64,000 bases of DNA from IMG/VR virus record IMGVR_UViG_3300028800_000001, positions 248,001 to 312,000 of that record; one strand, 5' to 3'. Positions 11,982 to 63,999 of this stretch are shown here, in pieces. The position numbers and the translations under genes are program-made. The stretch's first letter is position 1. Every line of letters begins with the position of its first letter. A model generated the notes under the pieces. It did no database searches. It saw nothing but the letters and a program-made list of their open reading frames with translations, and was not told where the DNA came from.

Positions 11982-12563
11982 TTATGTTGCAAAGTGGAAG
12001 ATGATTGCAAAGATCACGCTTGCGGTGGCAACCAGAATGCCAGAGGCCGCAATGATGTAGCTCCAGAGTTGGGATGCCCCTAGACTTCTCCCAACGGCTG
12101 AACTGTGTGAAGCACGCAAGTCATTGACCTGTCGTTGGAGCTCTTCATGACGTGTTTCATAGGCAGAAAGAGAAAGCAATTGTGTCATAGCAAGGCGCAA
12201 ATCAGCTTCAGCTTGACTGTGGGCATCCGAATTTTTCTCGATCAGTTTTCGTAAGGCTTCTATTTTTCCTTCAAGAGAGGTGGTAAGTGCTAATACTTCA
12301 TTGCGTGGAATATAGGTCTTGGTTTGATCAGCCATTGCTGCGCGAAAACCATTCATGGCCTCAAAGCGCTTGTCGGTTGCGGTTTCCGCTTTTAAAATGG
12401 CCTTTTCAGAAGAGGTAAAAGCAATGATCATTGCTTCTTTTTGAGCTGTATGAGAAGCGTCCATTGCAGCCTGCAAAGCATGAAAACGCTCTTCATAGTT
12501 TTTCTGTCGCTCTTCAAGAATGCGTTCAAAGAACGTCTTGAGATCAATGTTCATCTTCACCAA
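11982..12563 (-). CDS. coiled-coil protein with C-terminal TM anchor
   Basis: AQKEAMIIAFTSSEKAILKAETAT; C-terminal hydrophobic helix. Confidence 0.65.
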   Translation of the reverse strand: MVKMNIDLKTFFERILEERQKNYEERFHALQAAMDASHTAQKEAMIIAFTSSEKAILKAETATDKRFEAMNGFRAAMADQTKTYIPRNEVLALTTSLEGKIEALRKLIEKNSDAHSQAEADLRLAMTQLLSLSAYETRHEELQRQVNDLRASHSSAVGRSLGASQLWSYIIAASGILVATASVIFAIIFHFAT

Positions 12564-14134
12564 TCCTCAAAGATGCCACGCTCCATTGCGCCGCCATTTT
12601 GTTCAGTACTCTCGAAAGGTTTCTCAGGAAGTATCTCTTCTGTACTTTCTTCACCTAAAAGCCGCATATTCGGTTGATTAGGATTGAAAAGCACCTCGCA
12701 ACCACGACTCACAGTGTCCACGACATCATCATGCGCCCCTTTGGGGAAGTTGAGCAGTTCTTTCTCCATAATCGTGAGGTATTCAGCAAACTGGAGATGA
12801 TAGACTTGACCAGCTTCGTAAAAGACACTGGCAGAAATAGCACGTGACACTTTATCTTTGTGTGGTGTAAACGGACGTACTGGGATGCCCCAACGGACAA
12901 TAAGCTCTTGAGTCATCGTGAGCTGAAAAGCGGTCGCCTCGATTTCCACAAAATTATGCCGATACCGCTGGTAGCAGAGGGCAATTGCTCGTTGTATCTC
13001 AGGGCCGGTCATATGATCACGTTGCTGCTCTACTAAGAGCAGTTCATTATCAGGGGTTGCAGCCCAGGTGGAGATCACGGTGTAGTCAGCCGTTGTCTTG
13101 AGACTCGCTGCAAGGTCAACGGTGGCAAAGAGCCAACACTTTGCACGTGCCACATTTTTGTCACCATAGCGGGTATGCAGGGTATAGTGATTTTCATGAA
13201 TCGTGAAGTAGACAAAGTGCTCTTGTTTGAAAATATCGCCACCAAGAGGGGAAGGACTTTGCTGATACTGTGCTGCGTAGGCTGAAGAGCCCAAAGCAAC
13301 TTTTAACTTCTCCAGCTCTCGGTGTCCAACTTGTGCAGGCCAGAGCAATTGTCCTTCTTCAGTGCGCGGGTCTTCCCAGCCAATTTCGGTGTAGCAGCGG
13401 CGAGACGGCTCATACTCGGCTGGTAAGCAGAGATGCGTATAGCCACCTTGTTCAAGCACATGACCTGAGAGATCACGCTCGTGGATGCGCTGCATGATAA
13501 TGACTTTTGATCCCTTCTTCGGATCATTGAGACGCGAAGACATCGTCGTGTCCCACCATAACAGTGCTTCTTCGCGTTTTGTATCAGAATAGGCTTCAAG
13601 CACGTTATGCGGATCATCCACTAGTAGGGCGTCGCCACCTTCACCAGTTGCCGCTGAACCTACGGAAACTGCCATACGGTAGCCTCTGTGATTGTTCTCA
13701 AATCTTCCCTTGGCTTTTTGGTCTTTAGAGAGATAGAAGCAATTACCATAGCGTGCCTGAAACCAGTCTGATTCGATGAGGATCTTGCACTTGCGGTTGT
13801 CTCGAATAGCCAGCGACAGTGCGTAGGAGGAGCAGAGCCAGCGCTTAGCGGGGGTATCGATCCAACTCCACATCGGCCAAAAGACACTCACAATCAGGCT
13901 CTTCGCGTGTCGAGGAGGAATGTTGATCAGCAGGTTACGGATATCGCCTCTATTGACTGCCTCCAGGTGATCAATGAGTGCATCAATGTGCCAACCAGGA
14001 ACATACGGTGTGGTTGGCTCAATGACGTGCCATGCCTGCTTTACAAATTCACGCAGGTCACGGCGTCCTTGTTCTGCTTTCACCCGTTCTAATAAAGAAA
14101 GTGGGGAATGTGGGAATGTGGGAATCGCCACCAT
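12557..14134 (-). CDS. terL: terminase large subunit
   Basis: INIPPRHAKS Walker A, ATGEGGDALLVDDPH Walker B, IMQRIHERDLSG, AQYQQSP, TVDLA and HDDVVD RNase H-like nuclease motifs. Confidence 0.95.
   Translation of the reverse strand: MVAIPTFPHSPLSLLERVKAEQGRRDLREFVKQAWHVIEPTTPYVPGWHIDALIDHLEAVNRGDIRNLLINIPPRHAKSLIVSVFWPMWSWIDTPAKRWLCSSYALSLAIRDNRKCKILIESDWFQARYGNCFYLSKDQKAKGRFENNHRGYRMAVSVGSAATGEGGDALLVDDPHNVLEAYSDTKREEALLWWDTTMSSRLNDPKKGSKVIIMQRIHERDLSGHVLEQGGYTHLCLPAEYEPSRRCYTEIGWEDPRTEEGQLLWPAQVGHRELEKLKVALGSSAYAAQYQQSPSPLGGDIFKQEHFVYFTIHENHYTLHTRYGDKNVARAKCWLFATVDLAASLKTTADYTVISTWAATPDNELLLVEQQRDHMTGPEIQRAIALCYQRYRHNFVEIEATAFQLTMTQELIVRWGIPVRPFTPHKDKVSRAISASVFYEAGQVYHLQFAEYLTIMEKELLNFPKGAHDDVVDTVSRGCEVLFNPNQPNMRLLGEESTEEILPEKPFESTEQNGGAMERGIFEDW
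14104..14125 (+). repeat. Triple 8-bp direct repeat GGGAATnT, copy 2 (inside 5' end of terL)
   Basis: GGGAATGT GGGAATGT GGGAAT. Confidence 0.7.
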
Positions 14135-21191: not shown

Positions 21192-22109
21192 TTATTTTTG
21201 TTCGTGGCCTTGCAGGGCAAATGCAGTGCGATCTTCCCCAATGCAGAGCCAGAGATTTTCAAACAAGAGTGCTTCGGCAGGAACACTCATTGTTGGAAAA
21301 GCAGCATCTTTGTCAATATACGCTAAAGTGCAGTGTGGTGTAAAGCCATGTGTGTTGTCAATAGGAACAGGCAGAGACGTTCGAAGCTGTTCACGCCACT
21401 CTGCTATCCCTGGAAGGTCTACAGAGGCGTAAAACGGCAGCGTAGCGCTCTCTGTGGGGGTGTTTGTGAAGCACCCGATCCCTGAGACAATGCCATGTAC
21501 CGGAACCGCGTTTGTCGCATAGTCACCGATTGCTTTTTTGAGCTGTGCGGAAAGGGCATCAGGAACATTCTCAGCGCTTCCTAGTATCATCAAAGTGACA
21601 TGCAGCTCTTGTGGCTCACATTTCCCTTCACAGTCCAGTGCTATTTTTTGTGCGGCATCTGGCTCCAGATAAAATGCCACCATGATTGGCAAGGCCGACA
21701 CAGGTTTAGGTTGCTCTGGTGTTTCTTCTTTGCGTAGCCACAGCGTCTTTAAAAAAGAAACATGCTCTTCGTTGGCGCGAAAGATTGGCGTCTGCAAAAA
21801 GTCTTTGACAGCTATATCGTGTGCTGCAAGATAGCCAATTAATTGTTCTTCATTCTTGACAGGCAACGTCCATGTCGTCTCTTCAAAGATGCTTTTCTTC
21901 TTTGCAGGTTCTTCATCTGAAAGGGTTGCGCGCTCCTCTTCTGGGAGATCATCAAGATTTTCACAAGGCAGCACACGATTCAAAAAATCTTCACGTGCTT
22001 CATCAGTCAATTGGTGCCGTTGCAAAAACTTGGCAACGCGGCGTGAGAGATCAGGTGACATATTGTCAGGTACACTGCTTTTTGCACTATCGTCTTTGAG
22101 TATTTTCAC
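21192..22109 (-). CDS. 2H phosphoesterase (Acb1/2'-5' RNA ligase-like) with N-terminal helical modules
   Basis: Two HxT motifs: ELHVTL and FTPHCTLAY. Confidence 0.8.
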   Translation of the reverse strand: MKILKDDSAKSSVPDNMSPDLSRRVAKFLQRHQLTDEAREDFLNRVLPCENLDDLPEEERATLSDEEPAKKKSIFEETTWTLPVKNEEQLIGYLAAHDIAVKDFLQTPIFRANEEHVSFLKTLWLRKEETPEQPKPVSALPIMVAFYLEPDAAQKIALDCEGKCEPQELHVTLMILGSAENVPDALSAQLKKAIGDYATNAVPVHGIVSGIGCFTNTPTESATLPFYASVDLPGIAEWREQLRTSLPVPIDNTHGFTPHCTLAYIDKDAAFPTMSVPAEALLFENLWLCIGEDRTAFALQGHEQK

Positions 22110-25100
22110 AAAGTGTCTCCATTCAAAATGGTTTTGCCTACACGGGTTGCTGTTCTATTTAAAACTACCAGAAAGTCAGCACGTTTATTGATCGAATCTA
22201 CATGAGAGCGATCAACATAAATGGCATCATAGCCCTTCATTGCGGCGTAGCGACCAGGATCGTTGGCAAGATCAAAGAGCCGATCAATGCGGCGTGACTC
22301 CGTATACTTCCCAGCATCATCCAAGGCTTTGCCCCGTGTACGCAAATCATTCTTGTAGTCAATCCACTCATTGATTAAACGTCCCTTCTCAATTGCGGTG
22401 GTATTTTTGAGTACGGACATATGCAGCACATCATCGCCATAAGTAGCGGCCACATGAGACGCACTATATCGGTCAGATACTCCTTCTGTGGTAAGCGCGG
22501 TATAGGTTCCGTTGCCATAGACGCCAAGTCCTGCAAAATAGTGCCCACTTTGATAGCTTGCAGCATAGCCCAGGCCGTCAGAGGGATCACCACCATCATC
22601 CACACCGCGATAGAGCTCAGCCTCACCGTCTTTAATGTGCTGCGCAAGCACATTATCTTCAACCACATGTGGAGGGCCATCAAACCCCTGTGCTTTATAG
22701 ATTTCCTGTAAGCAGGCGTCGGCATCCGTGGCGCTACTGCTTCCTGGGATTGGGCCTTTGCCTGTATCCATATAGTTTTTGACGTAGGGAATATCTTCAG
22801 GGTTGCTATATTTGGCTTCCGTCTTCTGAAATTCCTGGTTATCAGGGTGTTTCGGTCCTTTCTCGCGGGTACCATCAGCATGCACAAGCAGGTGTGCATT
22901 TTCTGTCGTGGTAAATTTCCCTACGTGATCATGCGCAGGGTTGTACTTTTCTTCAAACTGCTCAACACTTTTTGTTCCTGAGACGCGGTAAGAAATGCCT
23001 TTGGCTTTGAGTTGTGCCTCAAGCGGTGGTGTAAGCTCATAATCATTATGAAACACAATTTCTGCAATAGTTGAGGTGTTTAGACCACCATGAAATTGTG
23101 CCTCTGGATAGCCGCGTACATCACTCACGTTTTGGTAGGTCAGTGGATCTGGACCATGCACACTAAAATTGGTATGATCAGGATGCAGCATGCTTCCTGG
23201 CAAGAGATAGCCACCCATACCAAGTGAGTCATCACCTGTCCAGGTGGTTTTTTGCTTCACCTCTGGTTTGAAGCGAACCGCAACGCCTCCATATTCATCA
23301 ACAGAGTCGAACATGCCATGCCGCGTCTGTCTCAGGCTTGCGCCGTCAGGATGATCGCTTAGATAGCCGTAAAGTGGACGCTGCTCTTTGGCAAGATCGT
23401 CTGGATAGCCAAAGAGATCATGTTCTGCTTCAGAACGTGAATCGTGATCCATAATTCCCGCAGAGGTATTGGTTTCAAATTGCGACTTGAAGCGTTCATC
23501 ATCCAATATCTTTGAAAGAATTGTTGGGCGTACCCGCATCCAAGGTTCTGCATTCTTGAGCAGTTCCACGGCTTTGTCATCAACGGCTTTGTTGTACTCT
23601 TCAGCCGTCATGTTATGCGTCTGCGCATGCTTTTCAGCGAACGCTGCACCTTGTATGTCATATTTTTTGAGGACGGCGTCTGGTGGACGCACCTGTTCTA
23701 AGATATCTTTTTTCTGATTATCAGGATGCGCCGGTCCTTTTTCAGTGGTACCATCACGATGCACTAAAAGGTGGGCATTTTCGGTGGTCGTAAATTGTCC
23801 ATTGTGCCCGTGGGCTGGATTATATTTCGCTTCGCCTGTGAGCAGCTCTTGATCACGTGCGGATAAATCTTCTAGCGATTGCACACCCATCAAACGATTG
23901 AAAAAGTCCTGACGCTCTGCGAGTGTCCAAGAGGCCGCAACAGGGCCAGCAAGAAACTTTTCTACCAGTGGTACTAGATCAGGGGCAAGCGTATCAGGGA
24001 TTGTGTTAATGGCTTGATTTTCTGCATCAGTGATTTGATCTTTATGTTCTGGGGTATCATCATCTATTTCCTCGTCATTTTGCTTCTCCTCTGGTAAATA
24101 CAATGAAAGATCAAGTGGTTCATGCATCTTGCCGTGGCTGCGATGCCCTGGCTTTTTGCGCGGCACAGGGATAACGCCATGAGCAGGTTTGCCGTGAGGA
24201 GCCGCATGTGGTTTTGCAGCAGGTGCGCCGTGAGCAGCAGCAGGTTTCTTGAGTGGCTTCACGCTCGTTGGCACTGCTGGATGCTTTGGTGGCATTCCAC
24301 CGGTTTGTGACTCAGGGTGTGCCGTAATCTTGAAAAAGTCTTCCCAGGTGGGATTCTTCATTCCAGCTAGCTGATGCAAAATCTCAAAACGTTTTGCGAA
24401 ACCTAACGCTGCTTCATCATTGGCTGCATACTCTTTTGAGAGGATCAGGGCTTTGGTTTCTTTGGTGAGAAACTTTCCCAGGATGCCATGATCAATGCTG
24501 TTGCGCAGAAAACTTTTTCCAATGACTTTCATCAGAAAGCTATGCGACTGGATTGCAATATCTTTTTTGACGAGTGCCGAAGAAAGTTGTGTCAGGTTAA
24601 TCTTGCCGGTCTTTTGATTGAGGGTATAGTGTCCAGATTGATCTTGTTTCATGCCAAGAATATATTCCAACATGCCGACTTTGGTCACCTGATCAGGGGG
24701 CATTTTCTCCATTGCCTCGGTTGCCGTCTTATCATCCAGGGGAGTGCTTTTTACATCCTCAGAGACCACTACGGGCTCTTTGTCCACTGTTCCACTGTGG
24801 ACTACAGGCACCGTATCAGAGGCTCCTACCAGATCTGCAATGCGGCTTGCACCGGTCTGTGAAAAGGCAATGCGCGTGCTACCAGTGGGCACAATACGAT
24901 ACGTCTTGCCATTAATGTTGGCGGTATAGACGCCGTCAGCCCCTCTGGTCATTGCCCCTTTGTCGGAGAGGGCTTTCGCAATGTGGGCAGGCATGGTGGT
25001 GAGCACATCAGCGTGCACACCGCCTGCGCCATCATCAGCACCGATGAATTGTCCGGTCGTAGTGCTGTGATTACGGTTATATTTTTCTTCAGGAAGATAG

Positions 25101-25165
25101 AGTGTAAGGTCAGGTTTCTCCTGTTCTTCTATCTCTTTACGAAAGAGAGCATAATGATACTTCAT
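22106..25165 (-). CDS. 1019-aa multidomain effector polyprotein: degenerate kinase + helical module + DUF3626-like + ART-like C-terminal domain
   Basis: Three KYNxxH tags; RFKSQFET/RPLYGYL/YPEAQFHGGL; C-terminal QGFDGPP, LYRGV, GVYGNGTYT, GYDAI, VVLNRT. Confidence 0.7.
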   Translation of the reverse strand: MKYHYALFRKEIEEQEKPDLTLYLPEEKYNRNHSTTTGQFIGADDGAGGVHADVLTTMPAHIAKALSDKGAMTRGADGVYTANINGKTYRIVPTGSTRIAFSQTGASRIADLVGASDTVPVVHSGTVDKEPVVVSEDVKSTPLDDKTATEAMEKMPPDQVTKVGMLEYILGMKQDQSGHYTLNQKTGKINLTQLSSALVKKDIAIQSHSFLMKVIGKSFLRNSIDHGILGKFLTKETKALILSKEYAANDEAALGFAKRFEILHQLAGMKNPTWEDFFKITAHPESQTGGMPPKHPAVPTSVKPLKKPAAAHGAPAAKPHAAPHGKPAHGVIPVPRKKPGHRSHGKMHEPLDLSLYLPEEKQNDEEIDDDTPEHKDQITDAENQAINTIPDTLAPDLVPLVEKFLAGPVAASWTLAERQDFFNRLMGVQSLEDLSARDQELLTGEAKYNPAHGHNGQFTTTENAHLLVHRDGTTEKGPAHPDNQKKDILEQVRPPDAVLKKYDIQGAAFAEKHAQTHNMTAEEYNKAVDDKAVELLKNAEPWMRVRPTILSKILDDERFKSQFETNTSAGIMDHDSRSEAEHDLFGYPDDLAKEQRPLYGYLSDHPDGASLRQTRHGMFDSVDEYGGVAVRFKPEVKQKTTWTGDDSLGMGGYLLPGSMLHPDHTNFSVHGPDPLTYQNVSDVRGYPEAQFHGGLNTSTIAEIVFHNDYELTPPLEAQLKAKGISYRVSGTKSVEQFEEKYNPAHDHVGKFTTTENAHLLVHADGTREKGPKHPDNQEFQKTEAKYSNPEDIPYVKNYMDTGKGPIPGSSSATDADACLQEIYKAQGFDGPPHVVEDNVLAQHIKDGEAELYRGVDDGGDPSDGLGYAASYQSGHYFAGLGVYGNGTYTALTTEGVSDRYSASHVAATYGDDVLHMSVLKNTTAIEKGRLINEWIDYKNDLRTRGKALDDAGKYTESRRIDRLFDLANDPGRYAAMKGYDAIYVDRSHVDSINKRADFLVVLNRTATRVGKTILNGDTL

Positions 25166-40892: not shown

Positions 40893-41191
40893 GCGTGTAC
40901 GTTGATCCGCTTTTTACTACCACGCCAAAGGCGAATTGGGCGTATAAAAAAGCATGCCATATGACGGCTGACACTGAAGAAGAACTGCACGCAATGGCAG
41001 AGCGTCTGGGACTCAAACGCTCCTGGTTTCAAAATCATCATCCACGCGCCGTCTTCTGGCATTACGATTTAACCGTAAACAAACGCAGGCAGGCCATTGA
41101 TTACGGAGCTGTTCCCATCACAGGGCAGCAAGTATTGGCACGTGTTCTGGCATACAACGAACGAGAACGAAAAGAGAAAGAAACGAATTAA
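40889..41191 (+). CDS. DUF4031 family protein
   Basis: VYVD, CHMTADTEEELHAMAERLGLKRSWFQ, HYDL. Confidence 0.85.
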   Translation: MSVYVDPLFTTTPKANWAYKKACHMTADTEEELHAMAERLGLKRSWFQNHHPRAVFWHYDLTVNKRRQAIDYGAVPITGQQVLARVLAYNERERKEKETN

Positions 41192-41236
41192 TTAATTTTT
41201 CAACCTTCTTTTTATAAAAATAAAAAATAATTAATT
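41186..41236. promoter_or_regulatory. paired AATTAATT motif upstream of helicase
   Basis: AATTAATT at 41186 and 41229. Confidence 0.55.
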
Positions 41237-41278
41237 ATTTATTTCCAATCTTACTATGAGAAGGAGGATCTTTTTTTT

Positions 41279-43855
41279 ATGGCACTAGCACTCGCACCGC
41301 GACCATATCAGCAAGAAGCATTTGATGCGATTATGGCACAGAATATCAAAGCATTGGTGAAGCTCCCGACAGGGTGCGGGAAAACTTTGTTGTTCCCGAT
41401 GTTGGCAAGGCATAAACGTTTTAGCAAAAAGATAACGCTTATTCTGGCAGAGCACGAAGAACTGTTAGAACAGGCCCGTGATAAGATTTTGCGCATGTAC
41501 CCCAATGCTGACGTTGGTATTGTGGGCTTTGGGAAAGCGGAGTGGGACCATCGGATAATTCTAGGGGGCGTGGATACGCTTTCCTATTCAAAGCGCTTAG
41601 AGAAATTGGCAACGCTGGATATCGGGTTAGTTATCTGTGACGAGTGTTTTCCGGCAGGAACACTTGTTGACGGGCGTCCTATTGAGACGTTGAAAGTTGG
41701 TGATACTGTCACGGCGTTTGATGAGAAAACGCAGACGTTTGCACAAAGACGTATCACTTCTGTCTCTCAGAAGTCGGCAGTAAGACTTTTAAAAATTATA
41801 GTAAATGGTGCATCGGTAGTATGCACGCCAAACCATCCATTTTACACTGAATCTGGATGGAAATATGCTGAGAACATTTTGGTAGGAGAGAGAATACTGT
41901 ATGCAAATCTTACTAGCAACGTGCCCGATTTGCGAGCAACAATTTCCGGTGTTGGAAAGTCACAAGCGAATCAAGTTCAGGAAAGGAATTCCAGTGTTTT
42001 GCTCACCAACATGCACAAAGATTGCAGTCTCAAAGATGAATTCAGAGAGAATGGCGAAGACAAACAAGAAATATGCTTCGCAGCGTATGAGAAGAAACAA
42101 TCCGATGCGCAACGAATCTTCGAGAAAGAAAATGAGATCAACTTTGGTGGCAATGGGACATGTTCCGAAGATTCGTGGGGGCAACGGAAAAGGATTAACA
42201 GTTCCGCAGCGGCTTTTGTTCGAGAGACTTGGTTGGGAACCGAAAGAAACTATTGTGAGAACGAACATAGTGAAAGCGGAGAATCTAGAGCGGTATCCAA
42301 CACATTACAAGGTGGACATTGGCAACGAAGCGCTGATGATAGCTATAGAAATCGATGGGGGGTCTCATTATTCGATAATGAGGAGAAAACAGGACGCGAA
42401 GAAAACGAAGTTTCTTGTTGGAAGAGGGTGGACGGTATTGAGGTTTACGAACCAGGAAGTGATGGAACATTTGGAGGATTGTGTCCAGGCGGTTCAGTCT
42501 ACAATTTTGAAGTCGAAGACCTCCATACCTATACAGCAAATGGCTTCGTAGTTCATAACTGCCATCATGCGGTCACCAAGAGCTATCTAGATATCTTTGC
42601 GGCCTGCAAAAATGCTTTTTTGTATGGCAATACTGCAACGGTGGATCGCCATGATCAGCGTGACATTACGGCTATCTTTGGCCCACCGGTTTACAGTAAA
42701 TCTATTAATGAAATGATTGATGCCGAATATCTTTGTGGCATCGTTCCTTTTACTATTCGAACACAGAACACCATCAATGTTGCGGTTTCTGCAACCTCTG
42801 GTGATTATAGTGAAGCGCGGCTGGAGCAGGCCGTCAATCGAAAGGATCGTAATGATTGCATCGTTCGGGCGTGTTGTGAAGAAAAGTATGGTGGACCTGA
42901 TTTGCCTACTGTTGTCTTTTGTGCTGGTACGCAGCATGCGAAAGAGCAGGCTTTGGCATATGTTCGAGCAGGAATACCTGCCGCGCATATTACGATGGAT
43001 GTTCCCAAAGAAATTCGTGAACAGCATTATGCTGATTTTGCTACCGGCGCAATTAAAGTCCTCACCAATGTCCAAATTCTTACTGAAGGATGGGACGCGG
43101 ATGTACGAAGGATTGTGTTTGCCCGTCCTACAAAAAGTCGCCCTCTCTTCACTCAAATGCTGGGGCGCGGGACTCGTATCGCTCCTGGTAAGGAAGCTTG
43201 TATTCTCTTAGATTTTACCGACAATTATCTTGACCATGATCTTGAGCCCTGCACACTAGAAGATGTTCTTGGTGTACCAGTACGCGAAGGGGTGGATTGC
43301 CGAGAGGTTATTCGTAAAGAGAAGGAGGCCAGTGGTGGCGCGGTTCCTGAAGACGGTGAAGAGAAGAAAAAGCGTGAGAAGCAGGAAATTGACGAGCGCA
43401 ACAAACTGGTTGAGAAGCAGCTCACGTTCCGCTACAAGTGGCAGCAGGTGCAAGGTGGCGCATACATTGCCACCGTTGGCGATAAGCGTGCCGGAGGCGA
43501 TTTGATCCTCTACCCATCAAAAGCCGGTGGTTATATCGTCGGGGTCTCCTATAAAGAAACACCAATGGCAAAGCAACCAAAAGAGGTGGTGGTTGCAAGA
43601 AACGTGCCGCTTTCCTGGGCTCAATCAATTGCAGAGCAGCAAGGGAAAAACTTGCAACTGGGCAATTATCAATTTATTGATCCTGATGCTCCCTGGCGGA
43701 AAAGTAAGCCATCGCAGGCGCAACTTGACCAAATCAAAATGCTTTCAAAAGCAACTTATGGGAAAATTCTTCCAAAGAAGAATATGACCAAGGGTGAAGC
43801 TTCAGAACTGATCTCTAAAGGGTTTGCGCTCTTGCAGCAAAAAGGGAGAAAGTAA
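41279..43855 (+). CDS. SF2 DEAD/DEAH-box helicase (ResIII/IRC3-like) interrupted by an intein
   Basis: PRPYQ, PTGCGKT, DE|CHH after splicing, TAT, LTEGWD, QMLGRGTR. Confidence 0.9.
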   Translation: MALALAPRPYQQEAFDAIMAQNIKALVKLPTGCGKTLLFPMLARHKRFSKKITLILAEHEELLEQARDKILRMYPNADVGIVGFGKAEWDHRIILGGVDTLSYSKRLEKLATLDIGLVICDECFPAGTLVDGRPIETLKVGDTVTAFDEKTQTFAQRRITSVSQKSAVRLLKIIVNGASVVCTPNHPFYTESGWKYAENILVGERILYANLTSNVPDLRATISGVGKSQANQVQERNSSVLLTNMHKDCSLKDEFRENGEDKQEICFAAYEKKQSDAQRIFEKENEINFGGNGTCSEDSWGQRKRINSSAAAFVRETWLGTERNYCENEHSESGESRAVSNTLQGGHWQRSADDSYRNRWGVSLFDNEEKTGREENEVSCWKRVDGIEVYEPGSDGTFGGLCPGGSVYNFEVEDLHTYTANGFVVHNCHHAVTKSYLDIFAACKNAFLYGNTATVDRHDQRDITAIFGPPVYSKSINEMIDAEYLCGIVPFTIRTQNTINVAVSATSGDYSEARLEQAVNRKDRNDCIVRACCEEKYGGPDLPTVVFCAGTQHAKEQALAYVRAGIPAAHITMDVPKEIREQHYADFATGAIKVLTNVQILTEGWDADVRRIVFARPTKSRPLFTQMLGRGTRIAPGKEACILLDFTDNYLDHDLEPCTLEDVLGVPVREGVDCREVIRKEKEASGGAVPEDGEEKKKREKQEIDERNKLVEKQLTFRYKWQQVQGGAYIATVGDKRAGGDLILYPSKAGGYIVGVSYKETPMAKQPKEVVVARNVPLSWAQSIAEQQGKNLQLGNYQFIDPDAPWRKSKPSQAQLDQIKMLSKATYGKILPKKNMTKGEASELISKGFALLQQKGRK
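41645..42559 (+). mobile_element. 305-aa intein in helicase motif II
   Basis: Block A CFPAGTLV, block B CTPNHPF, block F VYNFEV, block G VVHN followed by Cys +1. Confidence 0.92.
41901..42551 (+). CDS. DUF559/Vsr-like endonuclease nested in the +1 frame of the intein
   Basis: CPIC...FCSPTC Zn motif, NNPM...RKKMR NUMOD3-like, YKVDIG, IAIEIDGGSH, QDAKKTKFLVGRGWTVLRFTN; AGGAG at 41884-41888. Confidence 0.85.
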   Translation: MQILLATCPICEQQFPVLESHKRIKFRKGIPVFCSPTCTKIAVSKMNSERMAKTNKKYASQRMRRNNPMRNESSRKKMRSTLVAMGHVPKIRGGNGKGLTVPQRLLFERLGWEPKETIVRTNIVKAENLERYPTHYKVDIGNEALMIAIEIDGGSHYSIMRRKQDAKKTKFLVGRGWTVLRFTNQEVMEHLEDCVQAVQSTILKSKTSIPIQQMAS

Positions 43856-44161
43856 ATGCTTATTGGAATGTATCCAACGCTACTCAATACACAGGGGCTT
43901 CCGGTTTCGGTGTCCCTGTTCGAGTTCCTTGCCAGTGATTCGCTAGAGGAATTGAAACCATTTGCTGTACAGGAGGCGCAAGAGAAGAACAAACGTCAGT
44001 TCATTGCGCTACTTGGAGGTCGTTACGTCCTCATTGATACCCATTGGCGCGCAAGCGAGTACTTTCAAGCGTGTCCCATAGTAGCGCAATTTGCAAAAAG
44101 TGGCAAAGAGACCACACGAAAGAAGAAAAATCATGAGAATAAAAATTACCAAGTGGCTTGA
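43856..44161 (+). CDS. hypothetical protein
   Basis: Abuts helicase stop. Confidence 0.45.
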   Translation: MLIGMYPTLLNTQGLPVSVSLFEFLASDSLEELKPFAVQEAQEKNKRQFIALLGGRYVLIDTHWRASEYFQACPIVAQFAKSGKETTRKKKNHENKNYQVA

Positions 44162-62859: not shown

Positions 62860-63999
62860 TTAGTTTCCTGTAAACTCTGAAGGGACGACATTTTGTGTTG
62901 ATTTGAGTAATTCTTCCAGGTAACTGAGCACTTCGGTTGAGGTGATCTTTTGCGTTGTCGGCTGATTCGCCTGTAATGCACTCAGTTCTTTGGAAAGTGC
63001 GGTTGCGTTGGCGATAGCTGCGTCACGCTGTTGTTGCAAAATAACCATTTGTTTGCTCGTATCAGTCAGTGTTTGCTGGAGTGTTGCTGCTTGCTTTTGA
63101 AAGTTGGCCGCTTCTTCGGCTTCCTTAAAGAGATTGTCAATATGCGTCATATAGCAGTTGCTTGCCCCTGGAGGACTATCAAGCAGGTGGGAAGGGTCAT
63201 AACTGATTTCACCGCGTTCAAAACGCTGTCGCGTTGCAGTACGGCCCTGATGATCAACAACAGAATGTCCAACATTGTCGAGTGCTTTCTCTTCGTTGCT
63301 TATTGGCAGGCCAAGGAGCGTAATGCCGTTGAGGCCAATATTGCCGACGTTTTGATAAAAGGCGAGAATATCGCCTCCAAGAAAGCAGCCATTCTTTTTG
63401 CATTGCCAGCGATTTGTGCCAACCAACTTAAAATAATTGGCAACAACAGGATTTCCGATATCAAGCATGGTATTTGCTCCTAAGAAGGTGAAGAGGCCGT
63501 CCCACGGGTACGTACCTGGGCAGTCGCGTCTGCTGACAGGATCGATAGAAAAGTGGCCGGTGATACCGCCTGTGGCGTCGGCTTTACGCGTCGGAATATT
63601 CCAGCGCTGACAAATATGTTTAATGAGTGTAAAACTTGCCTGCTGCTGTTGTGGGGTGAGTGCGAGGCCATTGGTGACGTTATTGACGTGTTCAATAGAG
63701 ATAGTAACTAAGTTAGGATTGATTGACCACCAGGAATCCGCGCCTGCGGTAATCACCCCGTTTGCCCATGCCGCGTCATGTTCGCTGACGCATTGCACAA
63801 TAATTCCATCACGTCCAACGACGTAGTGAGCTGAGACTTGCGATGCAGGGTTGGCAAAATAGTTGGCAATATTTTGTGCGGTTGGATCGCCTTGTGATCC
63901 GGTACCATGCAAAATAAGATGTGTAGGGCTGTGCCCATAGCGATTCGTCCACATATTTGCTGTTGGTATCCAGAGCGCTCCTGGTTCGTCCATGATCAT
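62860..63999 (-). CDS. N-acetylmuramoyl-L-alanine amidase endolysin with LGFP-like and coiled-coil C-terminus; start may lie beyond window
   Basis: LILHGT, VSAHYVV, AWANG, ISIEH, GHFSID...DCPG; LGLPISNE...QRFERG. Confidence 0.9.
   Translation of the reverse strand: MIMDEPGALWIPTANMWTNRYGHSPTHLILHGTGSQGDPTAQNIANYFANPASQVSAHYVVGRDGIIVQCVSEHDAAWANGVITAGADSWWSINPNLVTISIEHVNNVTNGLALTPQQQQASFTLIKHICQRWNIPTRKADATGGITGHFSIDPVSRRDCPGTYPWDGLFTFLGANTMLDIGNPVVANYFKLVGTNRWQCKKNGCFLGGDILAFYQNVGNIGLNGITLLGLPISNEEKALDNVGHSVVDHQGRTATRQRFERGEISYDPSHLLDSPPGASNCYMTHIDNLFKEAEEAANFQKQAATLQQTLTDTSKQMVILQQQRDAAIANATALSKELSALQANQPTTQKITSTEVLSYLEELLKSTQNVVPSEFTGN

What the first reader, a model, noticed from the sequence alone, without database searches (positions are those of the whole stretch)
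41645..42559. Intein whose endonuclease is a separate gene hidden in the +1 frame
The intein has complete splicing blocks, but its in-frame middle is hydrophilic with no LAGLIDADG or HNH motif. The same DNA read in +1 (41901-42551) encodes a coherent Zn-motif/NUMOD3-like/DUF559 endonuclease with its own AGGAG and ATG, stopping within the codons of block G. Both frames stay open for 651 nt. Classical inteins carry the homing endonuclease in frame. Inference: a free-standing nuclease invaded a mini-intein and is translated independently; standard annotation would miss it.
Basis: partly seen in the sequence, partly recalled or inferred. Interest (0 to 1): 0.82.

Follow-up and report, generated by a model that had tools for sequence, protein, structure and literature searches.

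The report
Homing nuclease gene nested out-of-frame in intein
A phage helicase gene carries a self-splicing intein whose middle section also encodes, one base out of register, a complete and evolutionarily conserved DNA-cutting enzyme; the layout is real and widespread in phages, but the principle was published in 1998 and again in 2025-2026.

Summary
Window 41279-43855 (+) encodes an SF2 helicase interrupted between DE and CHH of motif II by a 305-aa class-1 intein (41645-42559). A 216-aa ORF (41901-42551) lies in its +1 frame and encodes a zinc ribbon plus a Vsr-like/DUF559 (EDxHD-type) nuclease.

It is not an assembly artefact. Two independently assembled contigs span the region without indels. 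The same +1 nesting is present in all 8 GenBank phages examined, 80/80 IMG/VR loci and 5 of 7 genome loci.

Across 62 clusters (80% identity) the host frame has no stops over the nuclease gene. Synonymous permutation predicts 7.9 stops on average, and 11.3 for the window. Substitutions there follow the nuclease frame (46.6% versus 24.8% amino-acid identity). The nuclease models at pLDDT 93; the host-frame product of the same DNA models as a disordered ~160-aa linker between two confident Hint lobes.

Related Vibrio phages carry empty, mini-intein and full alleles. Four free-standing relatives sit directly upstream of intein-less helicase genes.

Independent translation, cleavage and homing are inferred, not shown. 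Out-of-frame intein endonucleases are already published, so this is a large, apparently undescribed member of a known but rare kind.

The parts
41279..43855 (+). Helicase precursor ORF (858 aa): N-extein, intein, C-extein. It is an SF2 helicase (ResIII, DEAD, Helicase_C; phrog_16).
41279..41644 (+). N-extein (122 aa), ending in the DE of helicase motif II.
   Evidence: alignment with intein-less P0105/P0106
41645..42559 (+). Class-1 intein, 305 aa: Cys1 (CFPAG), block-B T61/H64, C-terminal VVHN, followed by Cys+1.
41645..41917 (+). Hint N-terminal lobe (intein residues 1-91), block-mean pLDDT 92-98.
41918..42394 (+). Host-frame 'linker' (intein residues 92-250). It is predicted disordered, poorly conserved and kept free of stops. 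This is the read-through of the nuclease gene.
42395..42559 (+). Hint C-terminal lobe (intein residues 251-305, blocks F and G), modelled confidently (pLDDT 88-97 from residue 261).
41884..41888 (+). Shine-Dalgarno-like AGGAG, 12 nt upstream of the nuclease ATG. It lies within the V-G-E codons at the end of the Hint N-lobe.
41901..42551 (+). Nuclease ORF in the +1 frame (216 aa plus TAG). The putative homing endonuclease.
41922..42014 (+). Zinc-ribbon module of the nuclease (C8, C11, C34, C38, nearly invariant); FCS/eL24-like.
42243..42521 (+). Vsr-like/DUF559 catalytic domain of the nuclease (residues ~115-207). Invariant residues D139, E150, D152, H156, D165.
42477..42548 (+). Doubly constrained stretch: the nuclease C-terminal helix and tail overlap intein blocks F/G. 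Over 42477-42512 both frames are equally conserved; over 42513-42548 the host frame dominates.
42560..43855 (+). C-extein (431 aa plus stop), starting with the CHH of motif II.

Best explanation
The window comes from a phage in a rhizosphere metagenome. Its SF2 helicase gene carries a mobile intein at motif II (DE|CHH).

Frame 0. Ribosomes reading frame 0 make an 858-aa precursor. The two Hint lobes (intein residues 1-91 and 251-305) are joined by a ~160-aa disordered linker. Protein splicing removes the intein and restores the DECHH helicase.

Frame +1. The DNA that encodes the linker, plus part of the Hint C-lobe, is also a gene in the +1 frame. Translation most likely initiates internally at ATG 41901. 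The product is a 216-aa enzyme: a zinc ribbon, a helical region and a Vsr-like (DUF559/EDxHD-type) nuclease domain.

Proposed function. The enzyme most likely cuts intein-less helicase alleles at or near the motif II codons in co-infecting relatives. Recombinational repair would then copy the intein together with its nested nuclease gene (homing).

Selection. Selection acts on the nuclease frame through the overlap. In the helicase frame it only removes stop codons, so the precursor can still be made and spliced.

Shown here: the two ORFs; their conservation and frame-specific selection; stop avoidance; the folds; the empty, mini and full alleles; the free-standing relatives.

Inferred: splicing, internal initiation, cleavage specificity and homing.
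For: 1. Precise 305-aa insertion relative to intein-less relatives, with all class-1 splicing residues present. Pfam Intein_splicing scores 38.2 bits on the excised intein against a cut-off of 35.8.
2. The +1 ORF hits DUF559 at E=3.9e-12. Its AlphaFold2 model has pLDDT 93. The best PDB fold matches are 3hrl (a DUF559 protein) and 3r3p (the I-Bth0305I homing endonuclease), both at probability 1.00. D139, E150, D152, H156 and D165 are invariant in 50 sequences. H156 and D165 align with H213 and D222 of I-Bth0305I.
3. The same +1 nesting occurs in 8/8 GenBank phages from Vibrio, Pseudomonas and Corynebacterium hosts, in 80/80 IMG/VR loci and in 5/7 genome loci.
4. In 62 clusters the host frame has 0 stops across the nuclease gene, against a mean of 7.9 after synonymous permutation. 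The third frame has 14.9 stops against 13.9 expected.
5. In the overlap, nucleotide divergence at nuclease codon positions 1/2/3 is 0.43/0.37/0.61. Amino-acid identity is 46.6% in the nuclease frame and 24.8% in the host frame. Controls in the Hint N-lobe and the C-extein show the host-frame third position as most variable, 0.70-0.71.
6. The host-frame middle is predicted disordered, flanked by confident Hint lobes.
7. Two independently assembled contigs span 41400-42800 with 3-4 substitutions and no gaps.
8. Vibrio phage relatives whose helicases are 77-88% identical carry an empty site, a 150-aa mini-intein, or the full intein with the nuclease.
9. Four free-standing homologues lie directly upstream of complete, intein-less SF2 helicase genes.
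10. A start codon lies just before the zinc ribbon in 61 of 62 clusters, and is ATG in 51.
Against: - There are no expression, proteomic, splicing or cleavage data.
- The AGGAG-to-ATG spacing in the window is long (12 nt), and only about half of the clusters show a recognisable Shine-Dalgarno sequence.
- Promoter-like matches are at chance level (7 found, 4.2 +/- 2.4 expected) and there is no special RNA structure at the start (z = -0.36).
- Of the EDxHD residues, the first Glu (Vsr E25 equivalent) could not be mapped.
- No NUMOD DNA-binding motif was detected.
- One of the four variants seen among metagenome runs changes R92 of the conserved IRGGNG motif to L in the nuclease frame while being silent in the helicase frame (read by hand). 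Some copies may therefore be decaying.
- A non-homing role for the nuclease is not excluded.
Confidence: 0.78

Rival explanations
1. Assembly or sequencing frameshift. The nuclease is really an in-frame intein domain, and two compensating indel errors make it look out of frame.
For: Metagenome assemblies can carry indels.
Against: Contigs from two independent runs span the region with 0 gaps. The same +1 register is found in isolate phage genomes and in 62 diverged clusters. No in-frame version was seen in any locus.
Confidence: 0.01
2. The +1 ORF is an untranslated relic. A nuclease gene once inserted and is now silent, and the frame is open only by inheritance.
For: There is no expression evidence. 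The Shine-Dalgarno signal is weak or absent in about half of the clusters. L044 lacks an obvious start and its first zinc knuckle. An R92L variant occurs in one run.
Against: The +1 frame shows a purifying-selection pattern, with the third codon position most variable. Amino-acid identity is 46.6% across clusters whose third positions differ at about 61% of sites. Catalytic and zinc-binding residues are invariant or nearly so in 50 sequences. A relic would accumulate stops, and none is seen in 62 clusters.
Confidence: 0.06
3. The nuclease is made by programmed +1 ribosomal frameshifting out of the helicase frame, or as a fusion. The product would be N-extein, Hint N-lobe and nuclease in one chain, not an independently initiated protein.
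For: The nuclease start sits exactly at the end of the Hint N-lobe. In L066 the N-extein, Hint N-lobe and nuclease are fused in one 397-aa open frame. Shine-Dalgarno signals are often weak.
Against: An ATG/GTG/TTG start lies just upstream of the zinc ribbon in 61 of 62 clusters. In many loci the +1 frame is closed by a stop only a few codons upstream of that start, including the window, where it opens at 41886. Free-standing relatives work as stand-alone proteins of the same length. No Rfam frameshift element is present.
Confidence: 0.05
4. Fractured gene with a split intein. The helicase frame is not read through; the two halves are translated separately and joined by trans-splicing, as in Dassa et al. 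2009.
For: The nuclease belongs to the same Vsr-like family that Dassa et al. found between split-intein halves (PMC2677866). L066 looks like a broken version.
Against: The host frame is stop-free through the nuclease gene in 62/62 clusters against about 7.9 stops expected. That result only makes sense if read-through is required.
Confidence: 0.03
5. The nuclease is real and expressed but no longer acts in homing. It might be domesticated for phage-phage exclusion, host DNA degradation or regulation of the helicase.
For: The family is old and stably associated with the intein. No in-frame derivatives were seen, which argues against a short-lived transitional state. Homing was not tested.
Against: Empty, mini and full alleles coexist among close relatives. 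The intein occurs in several SF2 helicase subfamilies. Free-standing copies sit beside the same target gene. All three are the classic signatures of active homing elements.
Confidence: 0.07

Closest known systems
Inteins with homing endonucleases encoded out of frame or antisense: the dnaX intein with a +2-frame LAGLIDADG enzyme (Gorbalenya 1998; Phillips et al., bioRxiv 10.64898/2026.09.14.751524), and actinophage inteins with a frame-3 EndoVII-like, antisense LAGLIDADG or antisense VSR-like enzyme (Gosselin et al., bioRxiv 10.1101/2025.01.02.630785)
   Same: The endonuclease ORF occupies the usual endonuclease insertion region between the Hint lobes but is read in another register. The host frame stays open. 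Selection follows the endonuclease frame. Secondary invasion of a mini-intein by a free-standing endonuclease gene is the proposed origin.
   Different: Here the enzyme is a zinc-ribbon plus Vsr-like/DUF559 nuclease on the sense strand in the +1 frame. The host is an SF2 helicase at motif II. The preprint lists DNA polymerase, minor capsid, terminase and thymidylate synthase as hosts of non-canonical endonucleases, and its VSR-like cases are antisense. The family found here spans phages of Vibrio, Pseudomonas and Corynebacterium hosts and 310 viral-contig relatives.
Fractured genes: split inteins with a free-standing GIY-YIG or Vsr-like endonuclease gene between the halves (Dassa et al. 2009, PMC2677866)
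   Same: The same broad Vsr-like endonuclease family associates with phage replication genes and inteins. The endonuclease 3' end overlaps the downstream intein C-part (6-69 bp in Dassa; 8-50 nt before the intein end here).
   Different: The host gene here is one continuous ORF, and its frame is actively kept open through the whole nuclease gene. In fractured genes the host is split into two ORFs that must trans-splice.
[quoted passage not shown] 2011, PMC3239194; PDB 3R3P)
   Same: A Vsr-like catalytic fold (Foldseek probability 1.00, TM 0.63 normalised to the target) with aligned His and Asp catalytic residues. Both have a bipartite layout: an N-terminal DNA-binding part and a C-terminal nuclease.
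   Different: I-Bth0305I sits in a group I intron in recA and uses NUMOD motifs. This protein has a CxxC...CxxxC zinc ribbon, gives no NUMOD hit, and is closer in sequence to the DUF559 protein 3HRL (E=3e-12) than to 3R3P (E=8e-3).
ShiLan-type out-of-frame HNH insertions in phage methylase genes (Arsenault et al. 2025, PMC11855218)
   Same: A homing endonuclease gene is hidden in an alternative frame of an insertion that the host frame reads through without stops.
   Different: ShiLan has no splicing domain, so the insertion stays in the host protein. Here the read-through is removed by a complete intein.
Free-standing phage homing endonucleases beside their target gene, and 'collaborative homing'
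   Same: Four relatives (L089, L090/L091, L101, L102) are stand-alone genes directly upstream of intein-less SF2 helicase genes.
   Different: In the window the nuclease gene lies inside the intein, so the two elements move as one unit.

Membership tests
Class-1 intein (Hint domain, protein splicing) | In-frame insertion that is absent from orthologues and interrupts a conserved host motif | tested here: met
   A 305-aa gap lies exactly between DE and CHH relative to P0105, P0106 and P0108.
Class-1 intein (Hint domain, protein splicing) | Splicing residues: Cys/Ser1, block-B TxxH, C-terminal His-Asn, and Cys/Ser/Thr at +1 | tested here: met
   C1, T61, H64, H304, N305 and C+1 are present. C1, T61, H64 and N305 are invariant and H304 nearly invariant in 32 inteins. 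The junctions are DE|C in 51/58 and HN|CHH in 44/58.
Class-1 intein (Hint domain, protein splicing) | Hint fold | tested here: met
   Pfam Intein_splicing scores 38.2 bits (cut-off 35.8) and PT-HINT 42 bits (cut-off 27.7). In the AlphaFold2 model residues 1-91 have block-mean pLDDT 92-98 and residues 261-305 have 88-97, both as beta-strands. No fold search was run on this model.
Class-1 intein (Hint domain, protein splicing) | Protein splicing activity | not testable with these tools
   Needs expression of the precursor.
Pfam DUF559 / Vsr-like (EDxHD) endonucleases | Sequence match above the curated threshold | tested here: met
   DUF559 scores 46.4 bits against a cut-off of 20.6, E=3.9e-12. 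All 103 database relatives carry PF04480.
Pfam DUF559 / Vsr-like (EDxHD) endonucleases | Vsr-like restriction-endonuclease fold | tested here: met
   The model has pLDDT 93. Foldseek finds 3hrl (TM 0.71, target-normalised) and 3r3p_B (TM 0.63), both at probability 1.00.
Pfam DUF559 / Vsr-like (EDxHD) endonucleases | Catalytic residues E, D, H, D (Vsr E25, D51, H69, D97) | tested here: inconclusive
   D139, E150, D152, H156 and D165 are invariant. H156 and D165 align with H213 and D222 of I-Bth0305I, and E150 with its extra conserved acidic residue. D139 matching D196 is inferred by position only. The Vsr E25 equivalent was not identified.
Pfam DUF559 / Vsr-like (EDxHD) endonucleases | NUMOD-type N-terminal DNA-binding motifs, as in I-Bth0305I | tested here: not met
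   No NUMOD hit at E<=0.1. A zinc ribbon is present instead (zf-FCS E=0.003; eL24 E=0.007).
Pfam DUF559 / Vsr-like (EDxHD) endonucleases | Site-specific cleavage of the element-less allele | not testable with these tools
   Needs a biochemical assay on DE|CHH-containing helicase DNA.
[quoted passage not shown] | The endonuclease ORF lies between the Hint lobes in a frame other than the intein's, while the intein frame stays open | tested here: met
[quoted passage not shown] | Purifying selection on the endonuclease frame and relaxed selection on the overlapped intein frame | tested here: met
   Codon-position divergence and per-frame identity.
Fractured gene / split intein (Dassa 2009) | The host gene is broken into two ORFs, each carrying one intein half | tested here: not met
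   A single uninterrupted ORF is seen in the window and in 61 of 62 clusters. Only L066 is broken.

The most novel reading that the evidence does not exclude
This is not a fleeting intermediate. It may be a large, old and stable family, apparently undescribed, in which a zinc-ribbon/Vsr-like homing endonuclease gene is obligately nested in the +1 frame of a motif II helicase intein.

Supporting observations:
- The register is the same in all 62 clusters, and no in-frame derivative was seen.
- The ribosome-binding site is built into conserved intein codons.
- The C-terminal helix of the nuclease is dual-coded with Hint blocks F/G.
- Lineages have switched between the nested state and a free-standing position upstream of the helicase gene at least twice.

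The family would then be a natural series linking free-standing endonuclease genes, mini-inteins, fractured genes and full inteins. It would also suggest that out-of-frame nesting can be a selected end state, for example by uncoupling nuclease dosage from helicase dosage.
Probability: 0.45. Interest if true: 0.68.

Novelty: new member of a known kind. Interest (0 to 1): 0.58.

Why it matters
Intein evolution. Textbook inteins carry their homing endonuclease in frame. How endonucleases first entered inteins is a long-standing question ('splicing first' models). This family offers many sequenced, cultivable examples, including Vibrio phages CP-T1 and 1.088.O, Pseudomonas phage MR14 and Corynebacterium phage phi673. 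All the stages coexist in it: an empty site, a mini-intein, an intein with a nested out-of-frame nuclease, a broken or fused variant, and a free-standing nuclease beside the target gene. That makes the invasion model directly testable by phage crosses.

Annotation. The nuclease is unannotated in all 8 GenBank records examined. Six-frame checks of 'featureless' intein linkers are therefore worthwhile.

Overlapping genes. It is a clean natural case: one frame is selected for protein function and the other only for the absence of stops. About 24 codons are truly doubly constrained.

Tools. The nuclease may be a compact site-specific enzyme that recognises a conserved helicase motif sequence.

Tried and rejected
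- Assembly-frameshift explanation: rejected. Independent contigs show no gaps and the register is conserved.
- Group I intron or other structured RNA in 41000-44000: no Rfam match at E<=1.
- RBS-sequestering hairpin at the nuclease start: the fold is no better than shuffles, z = -0.36.
- Internal sigma-70 promoter: matches at chance level, 7 found against 4.2 +/- 2.4 expected.
- NUMOD3 claim: no Pfam support.
- Other copies of the nuclease or intein in the 64-kb window: none found with HMMs built from A3 and A4.
- Context of NCBI protein P0003 (Ktedonobacter racemifer): the look-up of encoding contigs had no record.
It was redone with A3 and A4, built from allowed sources.
- The search for related loci with A3 on genome contigs failed for lack of a conserved stretch. 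It was redone with A1. Most of those 25 hits are generic DUF559 domains; only 7 are full-length relatives.
- First run of the permutation test timed out and was rerun with fewer permutations.
- Fractured-gene reading: considered and rejected.
Full report
THE OBSERVATION

The window holds an 858-aa ORF at 41279-43855 (+). A 216-aa ORF lies inside it at 41901-42551, offset by 622 nt, which puts it in the +1 frame.

Pfam identifies the large ORF as an SF2 helicase (ResIII, DEAD, Helicase_C) with Hint/intein-splicing matches. PHROGs files it with phage DNA helicases. The closest intein-less relatives are P0105 (551 aa) and P0106 (548 aa), at 68-69% identity. Aligned to them, the helicase shows a single insertion of exactly 305 residues between DE and CHH of motif II.

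The intein begins with Cys1 (CFPAG), has T61 and H64 of block B, and ends in VVHN followed by Cys+1.

The +1 ORF hits Pfam DUF559 at E=3.9e-12, well above the curated threshold, and a zinc-finger family weakly. An AGGAG sits 12 nt upstream of its ATG.

IS IT AN ARTEFACT OR CHANCE?

Neither.

Independent assemblies. The region is present in several rhizosphere metagenome runs. Contigs from two runs span 41400-42800 with only 3-4 substitutions and no gaps.

Recurrence in isolate phages. A tblastn search of the +1 protein against GenBank phages found 40 records with near-full-length matches at 41-46% identity. All lie under an annotated helicase CDS. I opened eight: Vibrio phages CP-T1, 1.088.O, 159E43-1b, 1.194.O, 104E43.1 and K391, Pseudomonas phage MR14, and Corynebacterium phage phi673. 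In every one the match lies in the +1 frame of an uninterrupted helicase CDS, and none annotates the nuclease.

Recurrence in viral contigs. A scan of IMG/VR found 310 relatives. In all 80 loci fetched the nuclease ORF is nested at +1 inside a long open frame, while the third frame is closed. L009 is the window's own contig, a 327-kb IMG/VR record.

Host genes. The hosts are all SF2 helicases of several subfamilies: ResIII/Helicase_C, SNF2-like, Helicase_C_2 and ERCC3-like. The intein sits at motif II, with junctions DE|C in 51/58 and HN|CHH in 44/58.

WHICH FRAME IS UNDER SELECTION?

I clustered the nucleases at 80% identity, which gave 62 clusters.

Stop avoidance. I permuted the synonymous codons of each nuclease gene, which leaves the protein unchanged. 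This produces on average 7.9 stops in the helicase frame, and 11.3 for the window. The observed number is 0 in all 62 clusters. The third frame behaves as expected, with 14.9 stops observed against 13.9 permuted. The helicase frame is therefore actively kept open.

Codon-position divergence. Across the overlap, pairwise nucleotide divergence at nuclease codon positions 1/2/3 is 0.43/0.37/0.61. That is the signature of a protein-coding frame. Amino-acid identity is 46.6% in the nuclease frame and 24.8% in the helicase frame over the same codons. In the control regions the helicase frame's own third position is the most variable: 0.70 in the Hint N-lobe and 0.71 in the C-extein.

Position along the window. 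The nuclease frame dominates from 41901 to about 42476. Over 42477-42512 both frames are equally conserved (0.50 each) and all three codon positions are constrained. Over 42513-42548 the helicase frame takes over. This last stretch is where the nuclease C-terminal helix and tail overlap intein blocks F and G.

STRUCTURE

With a 50-sequence alignment the nuclease models at mean pLDDT 93. It has a small beta-hairpin zinc module, long helices and an alpha/beta C-terminal domain.

The best PDB fold matches are the DUF559 protein 3HRL and the catalytic domain of the homing endonuclease I-Bth0305I (3R3P), both at probability 1.00. A profile search gives 3HRL at 3e-12 and 3R3P at 8e-3. The N-terminus resembles the eL24 zinc ribbon at 7e-3.

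D139, E150, D152, H156 and D165 are invariant, and C8, C11, C34 and C38 are nearly so. H156 and D165 align with the catalytic H213 and D222 of I-Bth0305I described by Taylor et al..

The same DNA read in the helicase frame behaves very differently. The intein model has confident Hint lobes (residues 1-91, block-mean pLDDT 92-98; residues 261-305, 88-97). Residues 92-250 are almost all below pLDDT 50 and have no secondary structure.

EVIDENCE OF MOBILITY AND ORIGIN

Allele states. Among ~60-kb Vibrio phages whose helicases are 77-88% identical, four states occur at the same site:
- an empty site in 1.285.O (QDE|AHH);
- a 150-aa mini-intein without a nuclease in K389 and K459;
- that mini-intein plus a second, LAGLIDADG-type intein in the P-loop in PS65A.1;
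- the full intein with the nested nuclease in 1.088.O and 24 others.

Free-standing relatives. Four relatives of the nuclease are genuinely free-standing, with the other frames closed: L089, L090/L091, L101 and L102. Each lies directly upstream of a complete, intein-less SF2 helicase gene. Three of these helicases show DEAHH or DESHH at motif II (L089, L101, L102); no such motif was found in the L090 helicase.

Tree. On a maximum-likelihood tree of 71 nucleases the free-standing forms are scattered. The tree needs four changes of state, of which at least two are forced by well-supported branches. The tree is unrooted, bootstrap convergence was incomplete and many branches are weak, so direction cannot be read from it.

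Direction of events. All nested copies share one register and the same relation to blocks F/G. One nesting event followed by spread of the composite element and occasional escapes is therefore at least as parsimonious as repeated invasions. This is inference.

Variants. L066 fuses the N-extein, Hint N-lobe and nuclease into one frame, with the C-terminal half in the other frame. It may be a frameshift error or a natural 'fractured' derivative. In species-representative genomes only 7 full-length relatives were found, all on MAG contigs. The family is mainly phage-borne.

MECHANISM

Shown:
- two overlapping ORFs;
- an intein with all splicing residues;
- a well-folded Vsr-like nuclease under purifying selection;
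- a host frame that is only kept open.

Inferred:
- the precursor is read through and spliced, restoring DECHH;
- the nuclease is initiated internally at ATG 41901;
- it cleaves intein-less helicase alleles at the conserved motif II DNA, and repair copies the intein plus nuclease.

The start codon sits at the end of the Hint N-lobe, at the canonical endonuclease insertion point. In many lineages the Shine-Dalgarno-like GAGG or AGGAG is formed by conserved intein codons (D-E-V, or V-G-E in the window). No special RNA structure, Rfam element or above-chance promoter was found.

WHAT IS KNOWN

Dassa et al. 2009 described 'fractured genes'. These are split inteins with a free-standing GIY-YIG or Vsr-like endonuclease gene between the halves, overlapping the downstream part by 6-69 bp. 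Taylor et al. 2011 characterised I-Bth0305I and named the EDxHD family.

Gosselin, Arsenault and Gogarten (bioRxiv 2025) reported actinophage inteins with endonucleases in a separate frame or strand. These were antisense LAGLIDADG, antisense VSR-like and frame-3 EndoVII-like enzymes, in DNA polymerase, minor capsid, terminase and thymidylate synthase. They proposed invasion of inteins by free-standing endonuclease genes.

Phillips et al. (bioRxiv 2026) showed frame-specific selection for a +2-frame LAGLIDADG enzyme in the cyanobacterial dnaX intein, an idea they trace to Gorbalenya 1998. Arsenault et al. 2025 described out-of-frame HNH insertions without an intein.

I found no report of a sense-strand +1 Vsr-like nuclease nested in a contiguous helicase intein. 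The library does not cover subscription journals.

VERDICT

The principle is already published, so I class it as a new, large and well-populated member of a known but rare kind, and I lower the interest from 0.82 to about 0.58.

Its value lies in three things: the breadth of the family; cultivable model phages that carry every stage of the cycle; and unusually clean evidence for a frame that is maintained only to avoid stops.

Noticed in passing
L066:2320-4583 (IMGVR_UViG_3300010351_001913): In this relative the N-extein, Hint N-lobe and nuclease are fused in one 397-aa open frame, and the first zinc knuckle is lost. The Hint C-lobe and C-extein are open only from 2910 in the other frame. This is either a contig frameshift error or a natural fractured or fused derivative.
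   Followed up: partly
L044:1557-4457 (IMGVR_UViG_3300013426_000013): This helicase carries two inteins: a mini-intein in the P-loop (…TGC|…VHN|SGKT) and the motif II intein with the nested nuclease. The nuclease ORF here has no obvious start codon and lacks the first CxxC, so it may be decaying.
   Followed up: partly
L095:301-3429 (Vibrio phage PS65A.1, MW824434.1): This helicase has a ~350-aa LAGLIDADG-type intein in the Walker A motif (GGGK|C…HN|T) in addition to the nuclease-less 150-aa mini-intein at motif II.
   Followed up: partly
L096:2382-2629 (Vibrio phage K459, OZ196316.1 44477-45775): A gene annotated 'endonuclease' starts at the stop codon of the helicase that carries only the mini-intein. 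It could be a free-standing homing endonuclease of another family serving that mini-intein. It was not examined.
   Followed up: no
window 41710, 41748, 41919, 42175: Four single-base variants occur among metagenome runs. By hand translation, 41919 A>G changes both frames (T7A in the nuclease, N>S in the helicase frame). 42175 G>T, seen in one run, is silent in the helicase frame but changes R92 to L in the conserved IRGGNG motif of the nuclease.
   Followed up: partly
L010, L017, L043 and L092 (intein C-termini): Some inteins of this family end in Ser-Asn instead of His-Asn (…VSN|CHH), a non-canonical penultimate residue.
   Followed up: no
L061, L082, L084 (SNF2-type hosts): In SNF2-like helicases the same intein sits after (D)EAH/EGH and is followed by C-[YFG]-[KV]-[ND], not CHH. 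The element has evidently moved between helicase subfamilies through the shared motif II.
   Followed up: partly
window 12557-14134 (-), 62860-63999 (-), whole window: The window is phage DNA. It has a terminase large subunit (phrog_38, E=3e-89) and an endolysin/amidase-like protein at its right end. It has no tRNA genes and a GC content of 46.6%. The source contig in IMG/VR is 327 kb, so this may be a jumbo phage. Several large ORFs (for example 22106-25165, 1019 aa) have no PHROG match.
   Followed up: partly
A4 alignment, intein residues L221/Q222 (window about 42305-42310): The only strongly conserved residues in the host-frame 'linker' (an LQ pair: Q222 invariant, L221 nearly so) are a shadow of the conserved Y-K of the nuclease's YKxD motif read one base earlier. 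This is a caution against reading such motifs as functional.
   Followed up: yes
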